Shown piece by piece: positions 7,200 to 40,810 of a DNA stretch of 64,000 nt. The position numbers and the translations under genes were made by a program. Position 1 is the first letter of the stretch. Each line of letters starts with the position of its first letter. The stretch spans positions 9,238,001 to 9,302,000 of the forward strand of contig OZ059896.1 in assembly GCA_964057225.1 (NCBI GenBank), written 5' to 3'. The notes below the pieces were generated by a model, which made no database searches, was not told where the DNA came from, and saw only the letters and a list, made by a program, of their open reading frames with translations. The DNA comes from Auanema rhodensis (taxonomy: Eukaryota; Animalia; Nematoda).

Positions 7200-7811
7200 T
7201 ATTGGTAAATTGCAAGAAAAAACGATAATGAGAGAGCATGATAGGCAGAAAAGTGGTATAATGGAAGAAAGACATACGAAGTTCACTACTTTAGGTCGAA
7301 GCTCAAGATCAGCAGCTCTTCATCGACAGCTGACGTCAATGACTCAGCTTTTTTTTCGAACTCTGCTCTAAAGATAATGCATGATATTCGTAATTTATGG
7401 AATTTTTAGGTATAACCTCTAAGAAAATAAGTTTTTCTGTTGTTTTTTTGAGAATTCTTTATCCCAAAAAGATATTTATATGATGTAATATCATACAAAA
7501 GCCTATCATCGCAATAAATGTTTTGTCATCATTATCTTTATAACATCCCCATTTTCCATTCCATCGACATCAGAGTAGAATCATTTTTCAATATGTTCTA
7601 ATCTTAAATATTTTTGTTACTTTGTACTTCTGTTTTATTTATTTAATTCAATCATACCATATCATTTTAGTTTGTTTTTGTTTTATTAAATATAATTTAA
7701 GCGGCTGTTTCTACTTATGTATATTTTATTTTTTTATATTTCAGAATAATTTCATAAATTTGAAATGTTGATGAGCTTAGAATTGAATAGATCATTTGTT
7801 TGGAACATGAT

Positions 7812-7840
7812 AAAACTAGGTCAGTACTATAAATATAAAA
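7812..7840 (+). promoter_or_regulatory. ROR/NHR-23-type element AAAACTAGGTCA followed by TATA-like sequences
   Basis: Match to an AT-rich extension plus AGGTCA at 7812-7823, TATAAA at 7828 and TATAAAA at 7834, about 300 nt upstream of the ATG at 8142. Confidence 0.4.
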
Positions 7841-8141
7841 ATCAAACGACTTCTCTCTATCTTTTCAACTTTTTTTCAAATAAGTTTTGAATGTTTTTTT
7901 TCGGAATTTGTTTCTCTTATTACACTTGAATCTTTGTTTTCGCTAAAAATTACAGCTTTAACCAGATTGTGCAAATCTCTTGCATATGTTAGATATGAAA
8001 TATAATTTTGCTCTTAAAATTAATATGTAAATCAATTATAATATTATATATTTTACATCTTACATCTTATATTTTATATTTTTTTTTTCTATTTCATATA
8101 CATATTGTTAAAATTTTTAATTTACAAATGACATTTCAGGA

Positions 8142-9788
8142 ATGACACATATTATAAAGCCTTTAATATTTTTATTCCTACAAGCTAGTATTCGGACAGT
8201 TTCTCTAGCTTTCAGTGAATCTGCTGAAACATCAATTACTAGTATTGAAAATAAAAATGTTGATAATAATATGACCAAGTTTAATGAATATTTGGAAGAA
8301 TTTTTTGCCCGAAATAATACCTTAGATGTTGATGAATGGATAACGTGTTTACCTGATTTGAAAGAAAAAGAAGAAATGACGGCAGTATGTTTTCACATTT
8401 ATTATATTAAACAAATTCTTTTTTTTTATTATTAAGTTGATAACAGAATTATGGGATTATGAGAGTTCAGATAATTATACATCTAACGTATTAGATAAAT
8501 ATATTCATTTACGATCTATAATAAATGTTACTCGTCTTAATGTAAGTTTTATTTTTTATTTTATTAAATATATAAATTATAATATTTTTTAATTTTACAG
8601 GATATTCTTGTAATTCATGAAAAGCCTAATCTTAATCGAAATTTACGTCGTTATTGGGGATATATGGCATTAAGAACTAAAAAATCCACAAAAAGGTAGT
8701 TGACATCATTTATGATATTTCTAATAATATTATTCATGTTTAATTCTTAATTTACTTTTAATAATTTATTTTAGAAATATCCATCATTCTGCTCCTCATT
8801 TTGAATCGGATGGAGACGTTTGCCGTGAAGCCGCATATATCTTTGAAAATACATTGTCCCGAAGTCTAGTTGTTGCCGGAGCTAGCCGATTTGCAGTTCG
8901 AGGGTAATTGAATGAATTCAAATTTTTTTCCTCTTCAGAATATCTAGAAAAAAACCCTATTCTTTTAATTCAGAAATATCTCATCATCATGTCAAAGCAA
9001 TTTCCAAATAGCTGACGCAGCTCACAACTGTGATCACATGTTTCATGTGAGTTGTTGGCGTTTCAGATTATAAAGTATCATATCATAGAAATATTAAGAA
9101 CACTAAACTATAATCGAATTTTGATAGTAAAGATAAATTATCAATTTAATTATTTTAGCATTGGAATATTGTAATTTCCAACTTATCTCTTAATACTAAT
9201 TCGATTTTTGTTCAATGGCATGGTATGGCAGAAACAAGGTAGTATACCATAACATACATATTGAAGTAATATACATATTTCCAGTTGCGAAAATGATGTA
9301 TTCATATCTACAGGAACCAAAAAAAATAAAATCTATCAGAATAATATTCCAGCTGTTATAGTATTCAATTATAATTTCTATATAATGATTATACTAATCA
9401 GGAAATATTTTCAGATTCGCAACTCCTTCAACGAAATACAAACACAAATGAAAAGTACAACTCCTGATATTGATGCTTGTCGCTTAACGGCAGGGTCAAA
9501 TGTCTTTGGCAGATATCTTAATGGGGTTCCATCTTTGAATGTATGTAATACATCCGCTACTATTGAGGTATTTGAAATATTTTAATATATGACGTCATTT
9601 ATGAATATACAAAGAATAACAATACATTCCTATATTGTTTTCAATATTTTATTTAGAATATACATGGCATATTCGTTCATATTGAGCAGAAACGACAAGC
9701 TCGAGATGCTTTGAAACTATGGGGCGATGTCATTCGACATGCATATGCAACTGATGACGAAAGCTCCAGTAATCGAACAACTTCCTAA
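8142..9788 (+). CDS. Secreted protein of about 360 aa, putative Zn-dependent amidohydrolase/peptidase of microbial type
   Basis: Nine exons join in frame (approx. 8142-8384, 8437-8541, 8601-8695, 8775-8903, 8974-9046, 9159-9238, 9285-9360, 9415-9567, 9657-9788). Hydrophobic N-terminus; motifs IHHSAPHFESDG, LVVAGASR, ADAAH, FVQWHGM, CRLTAGSNVFGRYLNG and FVHIEQ. The gene model is solid; the function is inferred. Confidence 0.75.
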
Positions 9789-12700
9789 TGTTTCATCCGT
9801 CTATGTCAAGAAATCAAGAAATCCCATGTTAATAGAAACATTGTTTGTGCCAATGCTTCCTATTTTAATTGTATTAAATTCTGTTTTTTTTTTCTTGTAT
9901 GTACATATGAATATATACATGTTTTTTAGTATTTATTATTTAATTTTCTTTTGTAATTTTAACACATCTATAGTAATTACACAAATATAGACAATCTTCT
10001 CAAGCTTTAGATCGTTTTGCTTTCATGTCATTCATATTATTGATTTGTCCAAATAATAATACTTTCTTGTTATGTTTTAACTATATTTTTGAGAATCTAG
10101 CCTAATGTTCTTCTTTTTTTTCTCTGATCAAGTTAGTTGTCTTCTTTTTATTTTCAATTTGTGCATGATAAATAAAGAAGGAACATAGCTTTGGAAGATA
10201 AAATAGAAAATTGAAAAACGTTGAACCGTCTGAACAGAGAGAAACTTCATTTAGATTTTCAGGATTTTGAGAAGAGAAGTTGAGTTAAGGATTAATAAAT
10301 AATAGAAGTGATAAAGATTTATACTTTTCTGAAGTTGATATTTTGAACTAAACAATGAAACCAAAGAAAAAAGAAAAATCTAAAACACTTTAGTTCAATT
10401 AAAGACCAACAATGAAATAATAGAAAATAGTGATAGTTTATCCTCTTGAGATATGTAAAAACAAATATAAGTTTTTTTGTTGGCATCAATTGATCTTCGT
10501 TAGAATCATTTGTTTTACAATTGAACAACTATATTTGTTATTTCATATTTTTCAAATGTTTAGAATGTTATATACTTCAATTTAGAAACTAAAATTCGTT
10601 TTCGAGAGCTTAATTGAAGGTATATCAGGTTGTATAAAAGTTAAGGAAACTTCCCTGTTCATTTGCAAATAACGTGAAACGCACATAAAAAACACAACCG
10701 ACTGCAGTCATTCCAAGGAAAAAATAAAGTGTAAGTTTTTTCTGATTGCAAGTGAAAACCATATGAAATCAATAATATAATATGACCGGATGATCTGACA
10801 ACGGTAAGAAGGGACAGTAAAGCAATAGAGATGATAGAATGAAAGAAGAAGCTGGCGTACAGGAGAAAGCAGAAGACTGGACAGCCTATTTTCCTTTCCA
10901 CTTGCCCTCAGTCTATCCACCTGATCATCATCACCACCACTTTGAATAGGAAGAATCAGAAGAAGAGAGGACACACGAAAGAGTGCTTAGGACACAAACT
11001 TTTAGAGAGAGATACAACCCCGATAGAGGAGAGAACAGGGACGCAGCGTTACAGCGCCACCACTACCACCATCAAACAACCCCCTTCCCGATCACCGGTC
11101 CGAAACAAGCGTATTTTTGCCACTGGTAAGGAAACCCCTCTCTGGGTTTTAACTAATATTGTCTTCAAAAATCTTGTCTTGTAATAAAACTTTATGCTCA
11201 TTTTTAGTATTAGTCCAGTTTATCACGATACTATGTTCATTGATCTACATCTAGCCTATAATTATTTTATTTTAATCAATTTAAGTTTCAAACACTCAAA
11301 ACTACGGAAAGGTTCACAGACATTCAATTATGTTTTCTTTCCTCGCACTTAACTGAATAAACATCAAGAAAGTTCGTCAATTTTTTTAAAAGCGAACTAG
11401 AAAATTTTACAAGGTACGTGATTTCGCGTAAACCACTCCGATCACGTACTTTGGAAAAGTTTGCAATGATCGCCACTTTGGCAACCTCATATGTTATTAA
11501 GAGCTTCTCCTTTTTAACTTAAATAAAACTTTTCTGAACAATGCATTAATATACTCTCGCTTTACATGGTTATACAGAATCATTAATATTTTCAAAATCT
11601 AATTCACACAATGGTATTACCTAATATTAAATCTTACCCAATATTTCAGCTATGCTTGCCTTTGCATCACAATAAAAATTTAAAAGTATCTCTCAATGCC
11701 CCGCTGGATTTTCTATTTTCCTTTGGTTTTCTCATGGCGGTTTTACATTTCTTCCTGATTACTGCTTAAATTCTCTCTTATTTATAATTAAGACAGCCAT
11801 CTTCGCCTTCTATTCGATTGTAGGTGGCTCTATGAAGCTATTATTGGAGGGAGGCGGAGAAGGTTAAATGAGAACAGACAGCGAGGACATCATTGCGAAA
11901 TAGCCGTAGGGGAATTTCATGCTCCTTCCGCTTTCTTCAATGTAGTTTTTGTTTTTACTAAGCACTAGTTCCCTTCAAATGTTCTATTGCTGTATCTCAG
12001 AGTTTGTGTGAAGTGTTAGTTTTGAATATTTATTTTGAAACTACTCTCCTTGGACCTAAAAACAACTATACATCCTTGCAACTTTAAAACATTCGGATGT
12101 TAAACAGCTTGAATTCAATTTACTACTCTTATATTATGACGCACAGAAATTCAGCGAATAGATTCCTATTAAACCCATAAGTTAAGGCAAAAGTAAGGTT
12201 GGGATAATGTTTTTGTTCAAGGAATATATTGCATGAATATTTGAAACATTCTCGTAATTCAGTTCATTCTTCTATCCATGTGACTAGTTATGGGTTTCCA
12301 GTCTTCCTTAAGCTTTATATTTCGCAACCGCTAAAGTTGTTTATGGCCTACAGCATCCATGTGGTTTGGTTATGAAATAATGAAGGATGTTCACTTTAAA
12401 GATAGTTCACTTTTCAATATCGATTTACTTTTTTTTGTTCTTGTTCCTTACTTTATGCAAAGTGTTACATATATTGTTTAGAACGTACAACAGTTGGTTT
12501 TAGTTCAGAAAGATGAATCATAAGTTTTAACTAATATTTCATTTTGTTCTTGAATTATTGTGAATATATATTTGTTATCTGTTCAATTGTTTTTTGAAAA
12601 TTTCTAGTCTAAAATGTGAATACTCGTATGTTTCGACAAGAAAATCTCCCGAAATAGCTTATTTCTTCTAAGAAGTTCCACATTACTTTTGTACTCCCTT

Positions 12701-13560: not shown

Positions 13561-15410
<1,850 letters not shown>

Positions 15411-38944: not shown

Positions 38945-40810
38945 ATGACAATATCATATTCGGGAAATTTCTTGAGGCTTCTCTTACGATGGAAGGGATC
39001 AATATGGAGATCTATTTGGAAAGAGCTTTTTATATATACTATTTTATTTTATGCAATTCGCATGTTTTACTTATATGGTATTGACCTTATTGATGACGAT
39101 GAGGACGAAAGAAGATATTACAGGTGCTTAAACTAGCGAAAAACAAATACTTGTAGTTTTTATTATAGGGCAAAGTTTGAAGCAGTTTGTCGCAAATTTG
39201 ACAGCTACACCAAATTGATTCCATTAACATTTTTGCTAGGTTTCTATGTTTCCAATGTTGTCTCAAGGTAATTAAAAGTTTGGATATGAAGAATATATAA
39301 TAATAATGATTGTATTTAGATGGTGGCGTCAATTTGAAACACTATGCTGGCCTGAAGATATAGTATCAGTTATGTGTTCAGTTATCCATGAAAATGATGA
39401 AGATAGTCAGAAGCGTCGTCACGTAATAGCTCGATACATAAATCTGTCTGCTGCTCTGGCCTGGTATAATAGCTTATGAATATATTAGGATGAAAACTGT
39501 TTAGGAGAGATATTTCCTCGAAAATTCGCTTACGATTCCCTACCGTGAGATCACTGGTTGATTCAGGATTGCTAACAGAGAAGGAATATGATATATTGGA
39601 AAAAAATACCGTGAATATTGTTGCCATTTAAGAAATAATATGATGAAAGCTTTTACAGGAAGATTGTCAAGCTGTTAGATGGTTGACACCATTGCACTGG
39701 ATTCAACAAATTATAAAGAAAGAAGAAATTGTAAGTATTTAATTGCATCAGCTTATTGCTCTAAATATTTGTTTTATTATTTTCATGCTTTTTAGTAAAG
39801 ATTAGAGTTCATGCGGAAAAAAATCAGTTACAAATGCTAATACTGCAATTACGCTTATTAACAAATTATATATATATACTTTTATTTATTTATAACTTGA
39901 TTGCGCAGAATTCTAATACAGAGCATGTAATTCTAAGTACAAAAGAACCGAATTTAAATGATTCAGGAAAAGTGACAATGGTTTCGCATCTATGATCATG
40001 ATTTTTTGTTTTCAAATAAATATTTCAGGAAAAAAAACCGACAGCTTCTTTACTGAATAATTTTGTGACAGAACTGAAGAATTATCGTCAATCGTTGCGT
40101 AAGTTGTATGCATATGATTGGGTATGTGTTCCGCTTGTATATACTCAGGTAAACTTATGAAAGAAGAAATATATGTTTTTCTTATGTTTTCAGGTTGCTG
40201 CTCTTGCAACATATGCCTTTTTCTTCTTTGCTTTGTTTGGTCGACAAGCTCTTTTATCAGATATTGAATTAGGAAAAGAAATCGACATGATTCTGCCAAT
40301 GTTTTTGATAGTTCAATTCATGTTTTTTGTGGGTTGGTTCAAGGTATTTTTCAATTCTTAAATCATATTCAATAGTTATGGCATAATTTCGTAGATTGGG
40401 CAAGACCTAATGCGTCCGTTCGGCTTAGATGATGACGACATTGAATTAAATTATATTTTGGACAGAAATATTGCTACATCATTTGCAATTGTAAATCAGT
40501 TACAAATGTCGGAACCACGTAAGTATACCAATGACTATTACGTGCAAGAACATACTGTTTTTACATCTGTAGCTGAATTTGAAGAAGATATTTTCTGGAA
40601 AAATAGATCTGGACGAATCGAACCTCTGGCTCATACACCACTTAGCAGACGTTTAGCTGAACATAAACCAAAATTACATTCATATGTTCGAGTAGGTCAT
40701 GGTGACGATGCAGAATCTAAATCGTGTTTCGTAACTTCTCGAGATAAACGGTTAGCTTGTATTCGTATTAATTTGAAAGAAGTTTTTTTTTCAGCAACAT
40801 AGATTGGTAA
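38945..40810 (+). CDS. Bestrophin chloride channel
   Basis: [48 protein letters not shown] and [18 protein letters not shown]. The last exon gives NIDW*. Confidence 0.95.

What the first reader, a model, noticed from the sequence alone, without database searches (positions are those of the whole stretch)
8142..9788. Secreted, intron-containing protein resembling a microbial Zn-hydrolase: candidate domesticated horizontal transfer
Seen: nine in-frame exons, a signal-like N-terminus, and ordered motifs SAPH-x3-D, DAAH, QWHG, TAGSNVFGR and HIEQ. Established: carboxypeptidase-A-like Zn hydrolases such as poly-gamma-glutamate hydrolases and N-formylglutamate amidohydrolases use an early PH motif with a nearby acidic ligand, a second His after a beta-strand, and a late catalytic Glu. 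From memory, this motif string resembles uncharacterised bacterial and fungal proteins more than standard animal enzymes. Inference: an anciently acquired secreted enzyme that could digest a bacterial capsule polymer such as poly-gamma-glutamate, or remodel the cuticle. The adjacent ROR-type element plus TATA hints at molt-linked expression.
Basis: partly seen in the sequence, partly recalled or inferred. Interest (0 to 1): 0.8.

Follow-up and report, generated by a model that had tools for sequence, protein, structure and literature searches.

The report
Nematode secreted zinc-hydrolase of microbial type
This is a real, spliced and expressed nematode gene for a secreted enzyme that belongs to an undescribed family of zinc amidohydrolases, found otherwise only in mushroom-forming fungi and soil bacteria, so it was probably acquired long ago from a microbe, and its substrate is unknown.

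Summary
Nine GT-AG exons (8142-9788, +) give a 361-aa protein, and transcript contigs from four runs join every exon exactly as predicted. They also add a 5' leader exon.

No Pfam family, PDB sequence or paper matches.

An AlphaFold model of the 62%-identical Auanema orthologue (pLDDT 92.6) is closest to three groups. These are N-formylglutamate amidohydrolase-family structures (Z 12.4-13.0), poly-gamma-glutamate hydrolases (Z 10.8-11.2) and M14 carboxypeptidases (about 10). The His, Asp, His, His, Glu order parallels the residues shown essential in PghP.

Relatives found:
- rhabditid nematodes of clades III-V
- many Agaricomycete fungi
- soil-bacterial MAGs (profile-profile probability 99.3%)
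- no other animal

Each group is monophyletic and nematodes are not nested in another group, so the donor is unresolved. Five introns are shared with Steinernema and none with a Mycena gene, so the gene is an old nematode resident.

The "ROR element plus TATA" is the leader exon's splice donor followed by intron sequence, not a promoter. The proposed poly-gamma-glutamate and cuticle functions are untested.

Verdict: a new family in a known superfamily, and a probable ancient horizontal acquisition.

The parts
7745..7819 (+). 5' leader exon. It holds an upstream ATG at 7765 that is in frame with the 8142 ATG, with no stop between them. Its start at 7745 follows a TTTCAG acceptor, a possible SL1 trans-splice site.
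   Evidence: all four runs show the joint 7819|8140 (listed as 7817->8138, cut +2). Contig pieces begin at 7739 with one other letter, as expected if the contig carries SL1's ...TTTGAG over genomic TTTCAG. That is an inference, since the contig letters were not visible. The reading frame was checked.
7820..8139 (+). Leader intron of 320 nt.
8142..8384 (+). Coding exon 1: signal-like N-terminus and the start of the N-terminal helical subdomain (invariant P71).
8437..8541 (+). Coding exon 2.
8601..8695 (+). Coding exon 3 (invariant E123 and G136).
8775..8903 (+). Coding exon 4: HHSAPHFESD motif. H156 (8797-8799) and D160 (8809-8811) are the proposed metal ligands. R186 lies at 8887-8889.
8974..9046 (+). 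Coding exon 5: conserved C197 and the DAAH motif (D205, H208; 9014-9025).
9159..9238 (+). Coding exon 6: FVQWHG strand. H236 (9219-9221) is the proposed third metal ligand.
9285..9360 (+). Coding exon 7: conserved C243 and the FISxG strand.
9415..9567 (+). Coding exon 8: conserved C289, the TAGSNVFGR motif (R300 invariant) and C311.
9657..9788 (+). Coding exon 9: FVHIEQ strand with H326, the proposed catalytic E328 (9684-9686) and Q329, then the stop codon.
9789..10027 (+). 3' UTR, as far as the transcript contigs reach.
   Evidence: contigs end at 9947-10027

Best explanation
The locus is an ordinary, expressed nematode gene with one leader exon and nine coding exons. It encodes a secreted, probably N-glycosylated and disulfide-bonded, single-domain metallo-amidohydrolase.

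The protein founds, or belongs to, an undescribed family within the zinc-hydrolase superfamily that holds N-formylglutamate amidohydrolases, phage and Bacillus poly-gamma-glutamate hydrolases and M14 carboxypeptidases.

Inferred mechanism, by analogy with PghP/PghL and carboxypeptidase A:
- H156 and D160 (H-x3-D, on the loop after a beta-strand) and H236 (end of the FVQWHG strand) hold one zinc ion.
- E328, at the end of the last strand (FVHIEQ), activates the zinc-bound water.
- H208 (DAAH), R186, N296 and R300 hold a carboxylate-bearing substrate, whose amide bond is cut.

The natural substrate is unknown. A glutamate-type or other acidic amide or peptide of microbial origin is the best guess.

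The family occurs in rhabditid nematodes (clades III-V), Agaricomycete fungi and soil bacteria, and was found in no other animal. The nematode gene therefore most likely descends from one ancient horizontal acquisition, made before clades III, IV and V split. It has since been inherited vertically and has gained introns.

Shown: the gene model and its expression, homology across the three kingdoms, the fold class, and conservation of the candidate catalytic residues.

Inferred: metal binding, the catalytic roles, secretion, and the transfer itself with its timing.
For: Gene and expression:
- The 361-aa ORF comes from nine GT-AG exons.
- Four transcript contigs carry every joint.

Family:
- A phmmer search with exon 4 found 36 representatives.
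- The spliced protein is 62% identical over 351 aa to P0001 of Auanema sp. JU1783. It is 36-46% identical to full-length proteins of Steinernema, Toxocara, Syphacia, Globodera, Panagrellus, Mesorhabditis, Bursaphelenchus and Pristionchus (35%), and 31.5% identical over 241 aa to a Sphagnurus (fungal) protein.
- Profile A1 hits many Agaricomycete proteins at E 1e-50 to 1e-103, and the bacterial-type P0114 at E 1e-15.
- P0114's relatives sit in MAGs of Acidobacteriota, Verrucomicrobiae, Myxococcaceae, Planctomycetaceae and Proteobacteria, on gene-dense bacterial contigs.
- hhalign of the nematode against the bacterial profile gives probability 99.3%, E 4.5e-20 over 264 columns.

Fold:
- The AF2 model has pLDDT 92.6 and pTM 0.89.
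- VIA-align: 2odf Z 12.8-13.0, 2q7s Z 12.4, 3a9l Z 11.0-11.2, 21dc Z 10.9, 5onj Z 10.0-10.8, carboxypeptidases about 10.
- Foldseek's top 50 are nearly all Zn hydrolases of this superfamily.
- ESM Atlas holds bacterial clusters at TM 0.74-0.76 over residues 31-350.

Catalytic pattern:
- H156, D160, D205, H208, H236, R186, R300, H326, E328 and four cysteines are invariant across kingdoms.
- Their order and secondary-structure positions parallel PghP's H40, E45, H78, H103 and E165, all shown essential by mutation (PMC6506827).
- That paper reports the same structural neighbours for PghL: 2odf Z 12.7 and 2q7s Z 12.2.

Age and vertical descent:
- Nematodes form one clade with 99% SH-aLRT support.
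- All five introns of the Steinernema orthologue coincide in position and phase with window introns. The two Mycena introns do not.

The gene's neighbours in the window are nematode genes: a protein kinase, a bestrophin and srx receptors.
Against: - No member reaches any Pfam model, including PF05013, PF05908 and PF00246, even at E<=1. No PDB sequence matches. The superfamily assignment therefore rests on a predicted structure and on motif order.
- I could not read the model's coordinates, so the spatial clustering of H156, D160, H236 and E328 was not measured.
- The model is of the orthologue P0001, not the window protein itself.
- The first ligand motif is H-x3-D, not H-x2-E (M14) or H-x4-E (PghP).
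- On transfer, nematodes are sister to the fungi rather than nested in a donor clade. The only bacterial family I could retrieve sits on a very long branch.
- Absence from other animals rests on a 42-residue phmmer query and word-indexed searches, not on an exhaustive full-length profile search.
- The bacterial P0114-type proteins lack an obvious signal peptide.
Confidence: 0.65

Rival explanations
1. The fold and enzyme class are the same, but there was no horizontal transfer. The family would be an old eukaryotic (opisthokont) gene inherited vertically, then lost in most fungi, most animals, basal nematodes and the Elegans group of Caenorhabditis.
For: With the bacterial outgroup, nematodes, fungi and the unknown pair P0051/P0052 together form one eukaryotic group, and neither nematodes nor fungi are nested in the other. 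The gene is old in nematodes.
Against: This needs very many independent losses. Among fungi only Agaricomycetes were hit, and among animals only rhabditid nematodes. No intron position is shared between the Mycena and nematode genes. The 'eukaryotic group' may be an artefact of having only one distant bacterial family as outgroup. The Atlas shows other bacterial clusters with full-length structural matches at TM 0.74-0.76 that I could not retrieve.
Confidence: 0.15
2. It is specifically a poly-gamma-glutamate hydrolase that digests bacterial capsule or biofilm polymer.
For: PGA hydrolases 3a9l, 21dc and 5onj are among the best structural neighbours at Z 10.8-11.2. The nearest Pfam-bearing Atlas cluster by language-model features is PF05908, at score 0.82, which the tool calls a lead only. 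One Atlas cluster of a looser structural match (TM 0.59) is fused to the PGA-synthesis protein CapC. Many of the nematodes that carry it feed on bacteria.
Against: It fails the PF05908 model. FGase-family structures match at least as well as PGA hydrolases. The PGA-binding residues of PghL (N73, S74, T79, S80, R171; PMC6506827) could not be mapped, and the motifs differ. Bacterial relatives are not next to PGA genes. Obligate plant and animal parasites keep the gene (Meloidogyne, Globodera, Toxocara), some with GPI-like tails, which fits poorly with a purely dietary role.
Confidence: 0.1
3. It is a cell-wall peptide amidase or carboxypeptidase acting on peptidoglycan stem peptides or similar microbial wall fragments. 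It would work like MpaA, Csd4 or Amidase_3 enzymes and serve in digestion or immunity.
For: Amidase_3-type enzymes and murein-peptide amidases share the fold at Z 7.7-8.6: Cwp6, Csd4, PlyPSA, CD27L, LytH and MpaA. Two invariant arginines and an asparagine suit a carboxylate-rich substrate. The protein is extracellular. All the organisms that carry it are soil organisms living among bacteria.
Against: These matches score lower than FGase and PghP, and lie in the range the tool flags as common. There is no sequence match to those families and no genomic-context support.
Confidence: 0.12
4. It is a catalytically dead binding protein (a pseudo-enzyme), or the gene model is an annotation or assembly artefact or contamination.
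For: None found. No activity has been measured for any member.
Against: Every candidate catalytic residue is invariant over three kingdoms. All introns are confirmed by transcripts with no differing letters. The gene has nematode-type short introns, shares five of them with Steinernema, and lies among nematode genes.
Confidence: 0.03

Closest known systems
N-formylglutamate amidohydrolase (FGase) family, Pfam PF05013. Solved examples are 2q7s (Ralstonia eutropha) and 2odf (Agrobacterium Atu2144).
   Same: These are the best structural neighbours of the model: Z 12.4-13.0, 174-178 residues aligned, rmsd 2.8-3.4. They share the alpha/beta zinc-hydrolase core, with a His ligand after an early strand, a second His at a strand end and a late acidic residue.
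   Different: There is no sequence match to PF05013, and only 10-14% identity in the structural alignments. The new family has an extra N-terminal helical subdomain (about residues 40-105) that the FGase structures do not cover. It also has four conserved cysteines and, in eukaryotes, a signal-like N-terminus. FGases are cytoplasmic enzymes of histidine catabolism.
Poly-gamma-glutamate hydrolases PghP (phage PhiNIT1, 3a9l), PghL/YndL (5onj) and the phage PM1 enzyme (21dc), Pfam PF05908.
   Same: Z 10.8-11.2 over about 170 residues. The ordered residues match: His, acidic, His, His, Glu. PghP has H40, E45, H78, H103 and E165, all essential (PMC6506827). Here they are H156, D160, H208, H236 and E328, all invariant. 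PghL has the same FGase structural neighbours at the same Z values.
   Different: It fails PF05908. The first ligand pair is H-x3-D rather than H-x4-E. The protein is about 150 residues longer. PGA-specific binding residues were not recognisable. No activity is known.
M14 metallocarboxypeptidases (carboxypeptidase A/B, TAFI, insect CPB), Pfam PF00246.
   Same: The fold matches over more than 200 residues at Z 9.5-11.1, including part of the N-terminal region. They share the one-zinc H/acidic/H site plus a late catalytic Glu (E270 in CPA), Arg/Asn carboxylate binders, and secretion.
   Different: There is no PF00246 match. The H-x2-E motif is replaced by H-x3-D. Identity is 6-10%. There is no recognisable pro-segment.
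Known ancient bacterial-type genes in nematodes. Two were noted elsewhere in this same genome by the scan: an AmiD-type peptidoglycan amidase (s1-391225) and an ArgZ-type arginine hydrolase (s1-418997).
   Same: All are intron-bearing, expressed, nematode-wide genes whose nearest relatives are microbial.
   Different: This is a different protein family, and those notes were not tested here. In this case there is also a large fungal clade and no named family or publication.

Membership tests
Pfam PF05908 Gamma_PGA_hydro (poly-gamma-glutamate hydrolase) | Sequence match to the family HMM above the gathering score. | tested here: not met
   hmmscan of ten full-length family members at E<=1 gave no PF05908 hit. 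The single exons of the window protein also gave none.
Pfam PF05908 Gamma_PGA_hydro (poly-gamma-glutamate hydrolase) | Hydrolysis of gamma-glutamyl bonds of PGA. | not testable with these tools
   This needs an enzyme assay.
Pfam PF05013 FGase (N-formylglutamate amidohydrolase) | Sequence match to the family HMM. | tested here: not met
   No hit at E<=1. The profile search of PDB sequences did not find 2q7s or 2odf.
Peptidase M14 (PF00246) | HMM match and the H-x-x-E zinc motif. | tested here: not met
   There is no HMM hit. The motif here is H156-x3-D160.
FGase / PghP / M14-like zinc-hydrolase superfamily (fold level) | Shared alpha/beta hydrolase core seen by structure comparison. | tested here: met
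   The AF2 model has pLDDT 92.6. Z is 12.4-13.0 to FGase structures, 10.8-11.2 to PGA hydrolases and about 10 to M14 enzymes. Foldseek gives probabilities up to 1.00 (0.89-1.00 among the first 30 rows) to the same families.
FGase / PghP / M14-like zinc-hydrolase superfamily (fold level) | Conserved His, Asp/Glu and His ligands plus a late catalytic Glu, in the canonical order and strand positions. | tested here: met
   H156, D160, H236 and E328 are invariant in nematodes, fungi and bacteria. H156 follows strand 148-152, H236 ends strand 229-235 and E328 ends strand 322-327, in P0001 numbering with an offset of 2. This parallels PghP/PghL.
FGase / PghP / M14-like zinc-hydrolase superfamily (fold level) | The ligands cluster around one metal site in three dimensions, and zinc is bound. 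| not testable with these tools
Metal content needs experiment.
Horizontally acquired gene in an animal | Relatives in microbes but not in other animals. | tested here: inconclusive
   Only nematodes, Agaricomycetes, bacteria and two unplaced sequences were found. The one exhaustive search used a 42-aa exon, and the others are word-indexed, so absence from other animals is not proven.
Horizontally acquired gene in an animal | The recipient clade is nested inside the donor clade on a tree. | tested here: not met
   Nematodes (99), fungi (98) and bacteria (100) are each monophyletic, and nematodes are sister to the fungi plus the unknown pair. The bacterial sample is a single family on a long branch.
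Horizontally acquired gene in an animal | The gene is really integrated in the host genome and is not contamination. | tested here: met
   There are eight spliceosomal introns in the coding region plus a leader intron, all removed in transcripts. Five intron positions are shared with Steinernema. Nematode genes flank it.

The most novel reading that the evidence does not exclude
An undescribed family of secreted zinc amidohydrolases, sister to the PGA hydrolases and N-formylglutamate amidohydrolases, moved between kingdoms in soil. It would link bacteria, mushroom-forming fungi and the ancestor of rhabditid nematodes. Free-living, plant-parasitic and animal-parasitic nematodes have kept it for hundreds of millions of years, and in strongylid, ascarid and oxyurid parasites it seems to have become a GPI-anchored surface enzyme. 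On this reading it acts on a microbial acidic amide polymer or wall peptide. That would make it one of the oldest and most widely retained inter-kingdom acquisitions in the phylum, and a nematode-specific extracellular enzyme absent from vertebrate and plant hosts.
Probability: 0.35. Interest if true: 0.7.

Novelty: new variant of a known kind. Interest (0 to 1): 0.55.

Why it matters
Most well-documented horizontal acquisitions in nematodes are plant-cell-wall enzymes confined to plant parasites. This gene would instead be an old acquisition kept across clades III-V, including major animal and plant parasites.

It has no counterpart found in other animals, and its catalytic residues are intact. 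That makes it a candidate nematode-specific extracellular enzyme whose substrate is worth finding.

It also defines a family that Pfam, the PDB and the searched literature do not yet cover. The family links three soil-dwelling groups. It adds a third branch, with an H-x3-D motif, four conserved cysteines and an N-terminal helical subdomain, beside the FGase and PGA-hydrolase families.

Tried and rejected
Searches and steps that gave nothing:
- Pfam on the nine single exons: only a sub-threshold chance hit.
- Pfam on 20 full-length or partial family members: no family.
- Profile search of PDB sequences: two chance hits at E 0.1-0.3.
- Scan of bacterial and archaeal genomes with nematode-derived peptide patterns: 43 pattern matches, none a relative.
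- A three-kingdom alignment (A3) was too divergent to give search patterns.
- P0001 and P0114 are not on record in the contig index, so I could not compare synteny with the Auanema orthologue.
- Papers: no article on this family under several term sets or under six accession and locus names.
- Rfam on the whole window: nothing.

Readings I rejected:
- Weak 210-320 aa metagenomic hits (P0102-P0117) looked like a short bacterial form. They cover only the first half of the profile and lie on sparse, eukaryote-like contigs of 47-50% GC. I read them as first exons of fungal genes.
- UniProt names carried by some members (DDE Tnp4, SCP, pectate lyase, COesterase, DUF4817). The two 'DDE Tnp4' members I scanned (P0003, P0010) have no Pfam domain at all, so that name is spurious for them. 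The other names sit on members I did not scan, so I did not rely on them.

Limits:
- The spliced window protein has no reference form, so it could not be handed to the search, fold or family tools. I used it only in scripts, and used the 62%-identical orthologue P0001 as proxy elsewhere.
- The model's coordinates are not exposed, so no inter-residue distances were measured.
Full report
**1. The observation**

The region is AT-rich (27-30% GC) with short introns. Joining nine exons at GT..AG boundaries gives an open 1086-nt CDS of 361 aa. The exons are 8142-8384, 8437-8541, 8601-8695, 8775-8903, 8974-9046, 9159-9238, 9285-9360, 9415-9567 and 9657-9788.

Four public runs of one study hold about half of the sampled words of 8000-10000, which is roughly the exon share. 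Laid on 7600-10400, each run gives one contig of about 1.4 kb. Those contigs skip exactly the eight predicted introns, with no differing letters. The runs are listed only as 'RNA?'. Since the contigs lack every intron, they are processed transcripts.

The contigs reach to about 10027 at the 3' end.

The five motifs sit at residues 153-160, 205-208, 234-237, 292-300 and 326-329.

**2. The 5' end and the 'ROR element plus TATA'**

The AGGTCA at 7818-7823 is the end of the leader exon plus the intron's GT (AG|GTCAGT). The TATA-like run lies inside the 320-nt leader intron. It is therefore not the promoter of the transcripts seen.

The leader pieces start at 7739 with one mismatch, just upstream of a TTTCAG|A acceptor at 7744/7745. 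That is what a contig carrying the end of SL1 (...TTTGAG) would give. This is an inference, because the contig letters were not shown.

The leader exon holds an ATG at 7765 that is in frame with 8142, with no stop between. Translation might therefore start 19 codons earlier. The Auanema orthologue is annotated from the downstream ATG.

**3. Identifying the protein**

Single exons hit no Pfam family. The spliced protein has no reference form, so I searched the 1.84-billion-protein representative library with exon 4 (42 aa). That gave 36 hits, seven of them at E<=1e-10.

The best hit, P0001 (Auanema sp. JU1783, 350 aa), is 62% identical to the spliced window protein over 351 residues. I used it as proxy in tools that need an id.

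Named relatives:
- Clade V: Cylicocyclus, Ostertagia, Cooperia, Ancylostoma, Trichostrongylus, Heligmosomoides, Pristionchus, Mesorhabditis, Caenorhabditis auriculariae.
- Clade IV: Steinernema, Panagrellus, Acrobeloides, Ditylenchus, Bursaphelenchus, Meloidogyne, Globodera.
- Clade III: Toxocara, Anisakis, Syphacia, Gongylonema.

No hit came from C. elegans or its close relatives, from filariae, from clade I/II nematodes or from any other animal. This absence rests on limited searches.

**4. Relatives outside animals**

The nematode profile (A1) hits dozens of Agaricomycete proteins at E 1e-50 to 1e-103. These include Mycena, Lyophyllum, Termitomyces, Schizophyllum, Lentinula, Marasmius, Amanita, Volvariella, Pluteus and an Auriculariales species.

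It also hits P0114 at E 1e-15. P0114's own relatives, 215 of them at about 486-504 aa, come from soil metagenomes. In named MAGs they belong to Acidobacteriota, Verrucomicrobiae/Terrimicrobium, Myxococcaceae, Planctomycetaceae and Alpha-, Beta- and Gammaproteobacteria. They sit on gene-dense bacterial contigs with varying neighbours.

The profile-profile comparison of nematode against bacterial alignments gives probability 99.3%, E 4.5e-20, 264 aligned columns and 24% identity. All motifs are in register.

The ESM Atlas independently lists a Basidiomycota cluster (337 members) and bacterial clusters as nearest by features. By shape it lists bacterial clusters at TM 0.74-0.76 over residues 31-350.

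No family member carries a Pfam domain. No PDB sequence matches. No paper was found.

**5. Fold and active site**

AlphaFold2 on A1 gives a confident model (pLDDT 92.6, pTM 0.89).

| Solved structure | Family | Z | Residues aligned | rmsd |
|---|---|---|---|---|
| 2odf | FGase family | 12.8-13.0 | 176-178 | 3.1-3.4 |
| 2q7s | N-formylglutamate amidohydrolase | 12.4 | 174 | 2.8 |
| 3a9l | PghP | 11.0-11.2 | 171-175 | 3.6-4.0 |
| 21dc | phage PM1 PGA hydrolase | 10.9 | 167 | 3.4 |
| 5onj | YndL/PghL | 10.0-10.8 | 170-171 | 3.5-4.1 |
| M14 carboxypeptidases | M14 | about 10-11 | more than 200 | about 4 |

Foldseek agrees. Z of 11-13 for an alpha/beta protein stands above the tool's stated background of 7-8.

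Twenty-four residues are at least 90% conserved and identical across 26 nematode, 45 fungal and 14 bacterial sequences. In window numbering they are P71, E123, G136, H156, D160, L179, G183, R186, C197, D205, H208, Q234, H236, G237, C243, S250, G252, C289, R300, G304, F324, H326, E328 and Q329.

In the model, H156 follows a strand, D160 precedes a helix, H236 ends the FVQWHG strand and E328 ends the last strand (offset 2 from P0001).

In PghP/PghL the zinc ligands are His40/41, Glu45/46 and His103/102. His78/77 and Glu165, at the C-terminus of strand beta7 and equivalent to CPA Glu270, are also essential by mutagenesis. PghL's nearest non-PGA structures are the same 2odf (Z 12.7) and 2q7s (Z 12.2) (PMC6506827).

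The order H156, D160, H208, H236, E328 mirrors that set. I therefore read the protein as a one-zinc amidohydrolase with E328 as general base. R186, N296 and R300 are the likely carboxylate binders. This last step is by analogy only, and I could not measure distances in the model.

**6. Location of the protein**

The window protein and most nematode and fungal members begin with a hydrophobic, signal-like segment. The window protein has eight N-x-S/T sequons and seven cysteines, four of them at family-conserved positions.

Orthologues of Toxocara, Syphacia, Cylicocyclus and Ostertagia end in a hydrophobic tail typical of GPI-anchor signals. The window protein and P0001 do not. The bacterial P0114-type proteins have an extra domain of about 180-215 aa at the N-terminus and no obvious signal peptide.

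**7. Evolution**

In maximum-likelihood trees (LG+C20, SH-aLRT), several groups are each one clade:
- the 26 nematode rows (99)
- the 45 fungal rows (98)
- the 14 bacterial rows (100)
- an unplaced pair, P0051/P0052 (99), which is intronless on a 35% GC contig

Rooted on the bacteria, nematodes are sister to fungi plus the unplaced pair, with weak support (76) for the latter grouping. The tree does not name a donor, and the long bacterial branch (3.6) warns against over-reading it.

Within nematodes the shallow groupings follow taxonomy: Toxocara with Syphacia, Globodera with Meloidogyne, the Ditylenchus copies together, and Cylicocyclus with Ostertagia.

The Steinernema carpocapsae gene (L031) has five introns. 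All five coincide in alignment column and phase with window introns, after window residues 81, 116, 191, 267 and 318. The Mycena indigotica gene (L032) has two introns, near residue 210 (phase 0) and residue 254 (phase 1). Neither is shared.

The gene was thus already an intron-bearing nematode gene before clades IV and V split, and nothing ties the fungal and nematode gene structures together.

Patchy distribution, absence from other animals as far as searched, and presence in bacteria together favour an ancient acquisition. Vertical descent with massive loss is the main rival.

**8. Function**

Nothing tested here points to a substrate. The proposed poly-gamma-glutamate role has some support:
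- the structural kinship
- a weak Atlas lead to PF05908, at score 0.82
- a CapC-fused cluster of looser fit, at TM 0.59

Against it:
- the family fails the PF05908 model
- it matches FGase structures at least as well
- it is not linked to PGA genes in bacteria
- obligate parasites keep it

A role in the cuticle or in moulting has no support now that the ROR/TATA reading is gone.

**9. Verdict**

The gene is a member of an undescribed family in a known zinc-hydrolase superfamily, with a cross-kingdom distribution that makes ancient horizontal acquisition likely but unproven.

Noticed in passing
window 7745-7819 and 8140-8144: The leader exon carries an ATG at 7765 in frame with the annotated start at 8142, with no stop between. 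The first AUG of the mRNA would add 19 residues ahead of the signal-like segment.
   Followed up: partly
window 7739-7745: Transcript contig pieces begin 6 nt upstream of a TTTCAG|A acceptor with exactly one mismatch. This fits an SL1 (...TTTGAG) trans-spliced 5' end. The contig letters could not be viewed.
   Followed up: partly
P0005, P0027, P0037, P0008 (Toxocara, Syphacia, Cylicocyclus, Ostertagia orthologues): The animal-parasite orthologues end in a hydrophobic C-terminal tail that looks like a GPI-anchor signal. The window protein, the Auanema orthologue and the clade IV and other free-living orthologues inspected lack it.
   Followed up: partly
L009-L030 (bacterial MAG loci): The bacterial P0114-type proteins are mostly 65-87% identical (down to 51%) across different phyla (Acidobacteriota, Verrucomicrobiae, Myxococcota, Planctomycetota, Proteobacteria). 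This suggests recent lateral spread among soil bacteria, or MAG binning errors. They carry an uncharacterised N-terminal domain of about 180-215 aa.
   Followed up: no
L004 (P0051) and P0052: Two full-length, intronless relatives come from an unidentified organism, on AT-rich contigs (35% GC). They form their own clade beside the fungi and could mark another eukaryotic lineage that carries the family.
   Followed up: partly
P0028 (Sphagnurus paluster, 459 aa) and P0020 (Caenorhabditis auriculariae, 1400 aa): The Sphagnurus protein holds a partial first copy and a full second copy of the domain. The C. auriculariae protein embeds the domain at about residues 86-415 of a 1400-aa model, probably a fused gene prediction.
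   Followed up: no
UniProt names of P0003, P0010, P0027, P0009, P0050, P0053, P0042: Family members carry unrelated automatic names (DDE Tnp4, SCP, pectate lyase, COesterase, DUF4817). The Pfam scan of P0003 and P0010 found no such domain, so these names look spurious.
   Followed up: partly
window 13993-14217 (+), 40410-40799 (+): A protein-kinase exon (Pkinase, E 6e-10) and the end of a bestrophin domain (E 2.5e-7) lie downstream. Both are ordinary nematode neighbours of the gene.
   Followed up: partly
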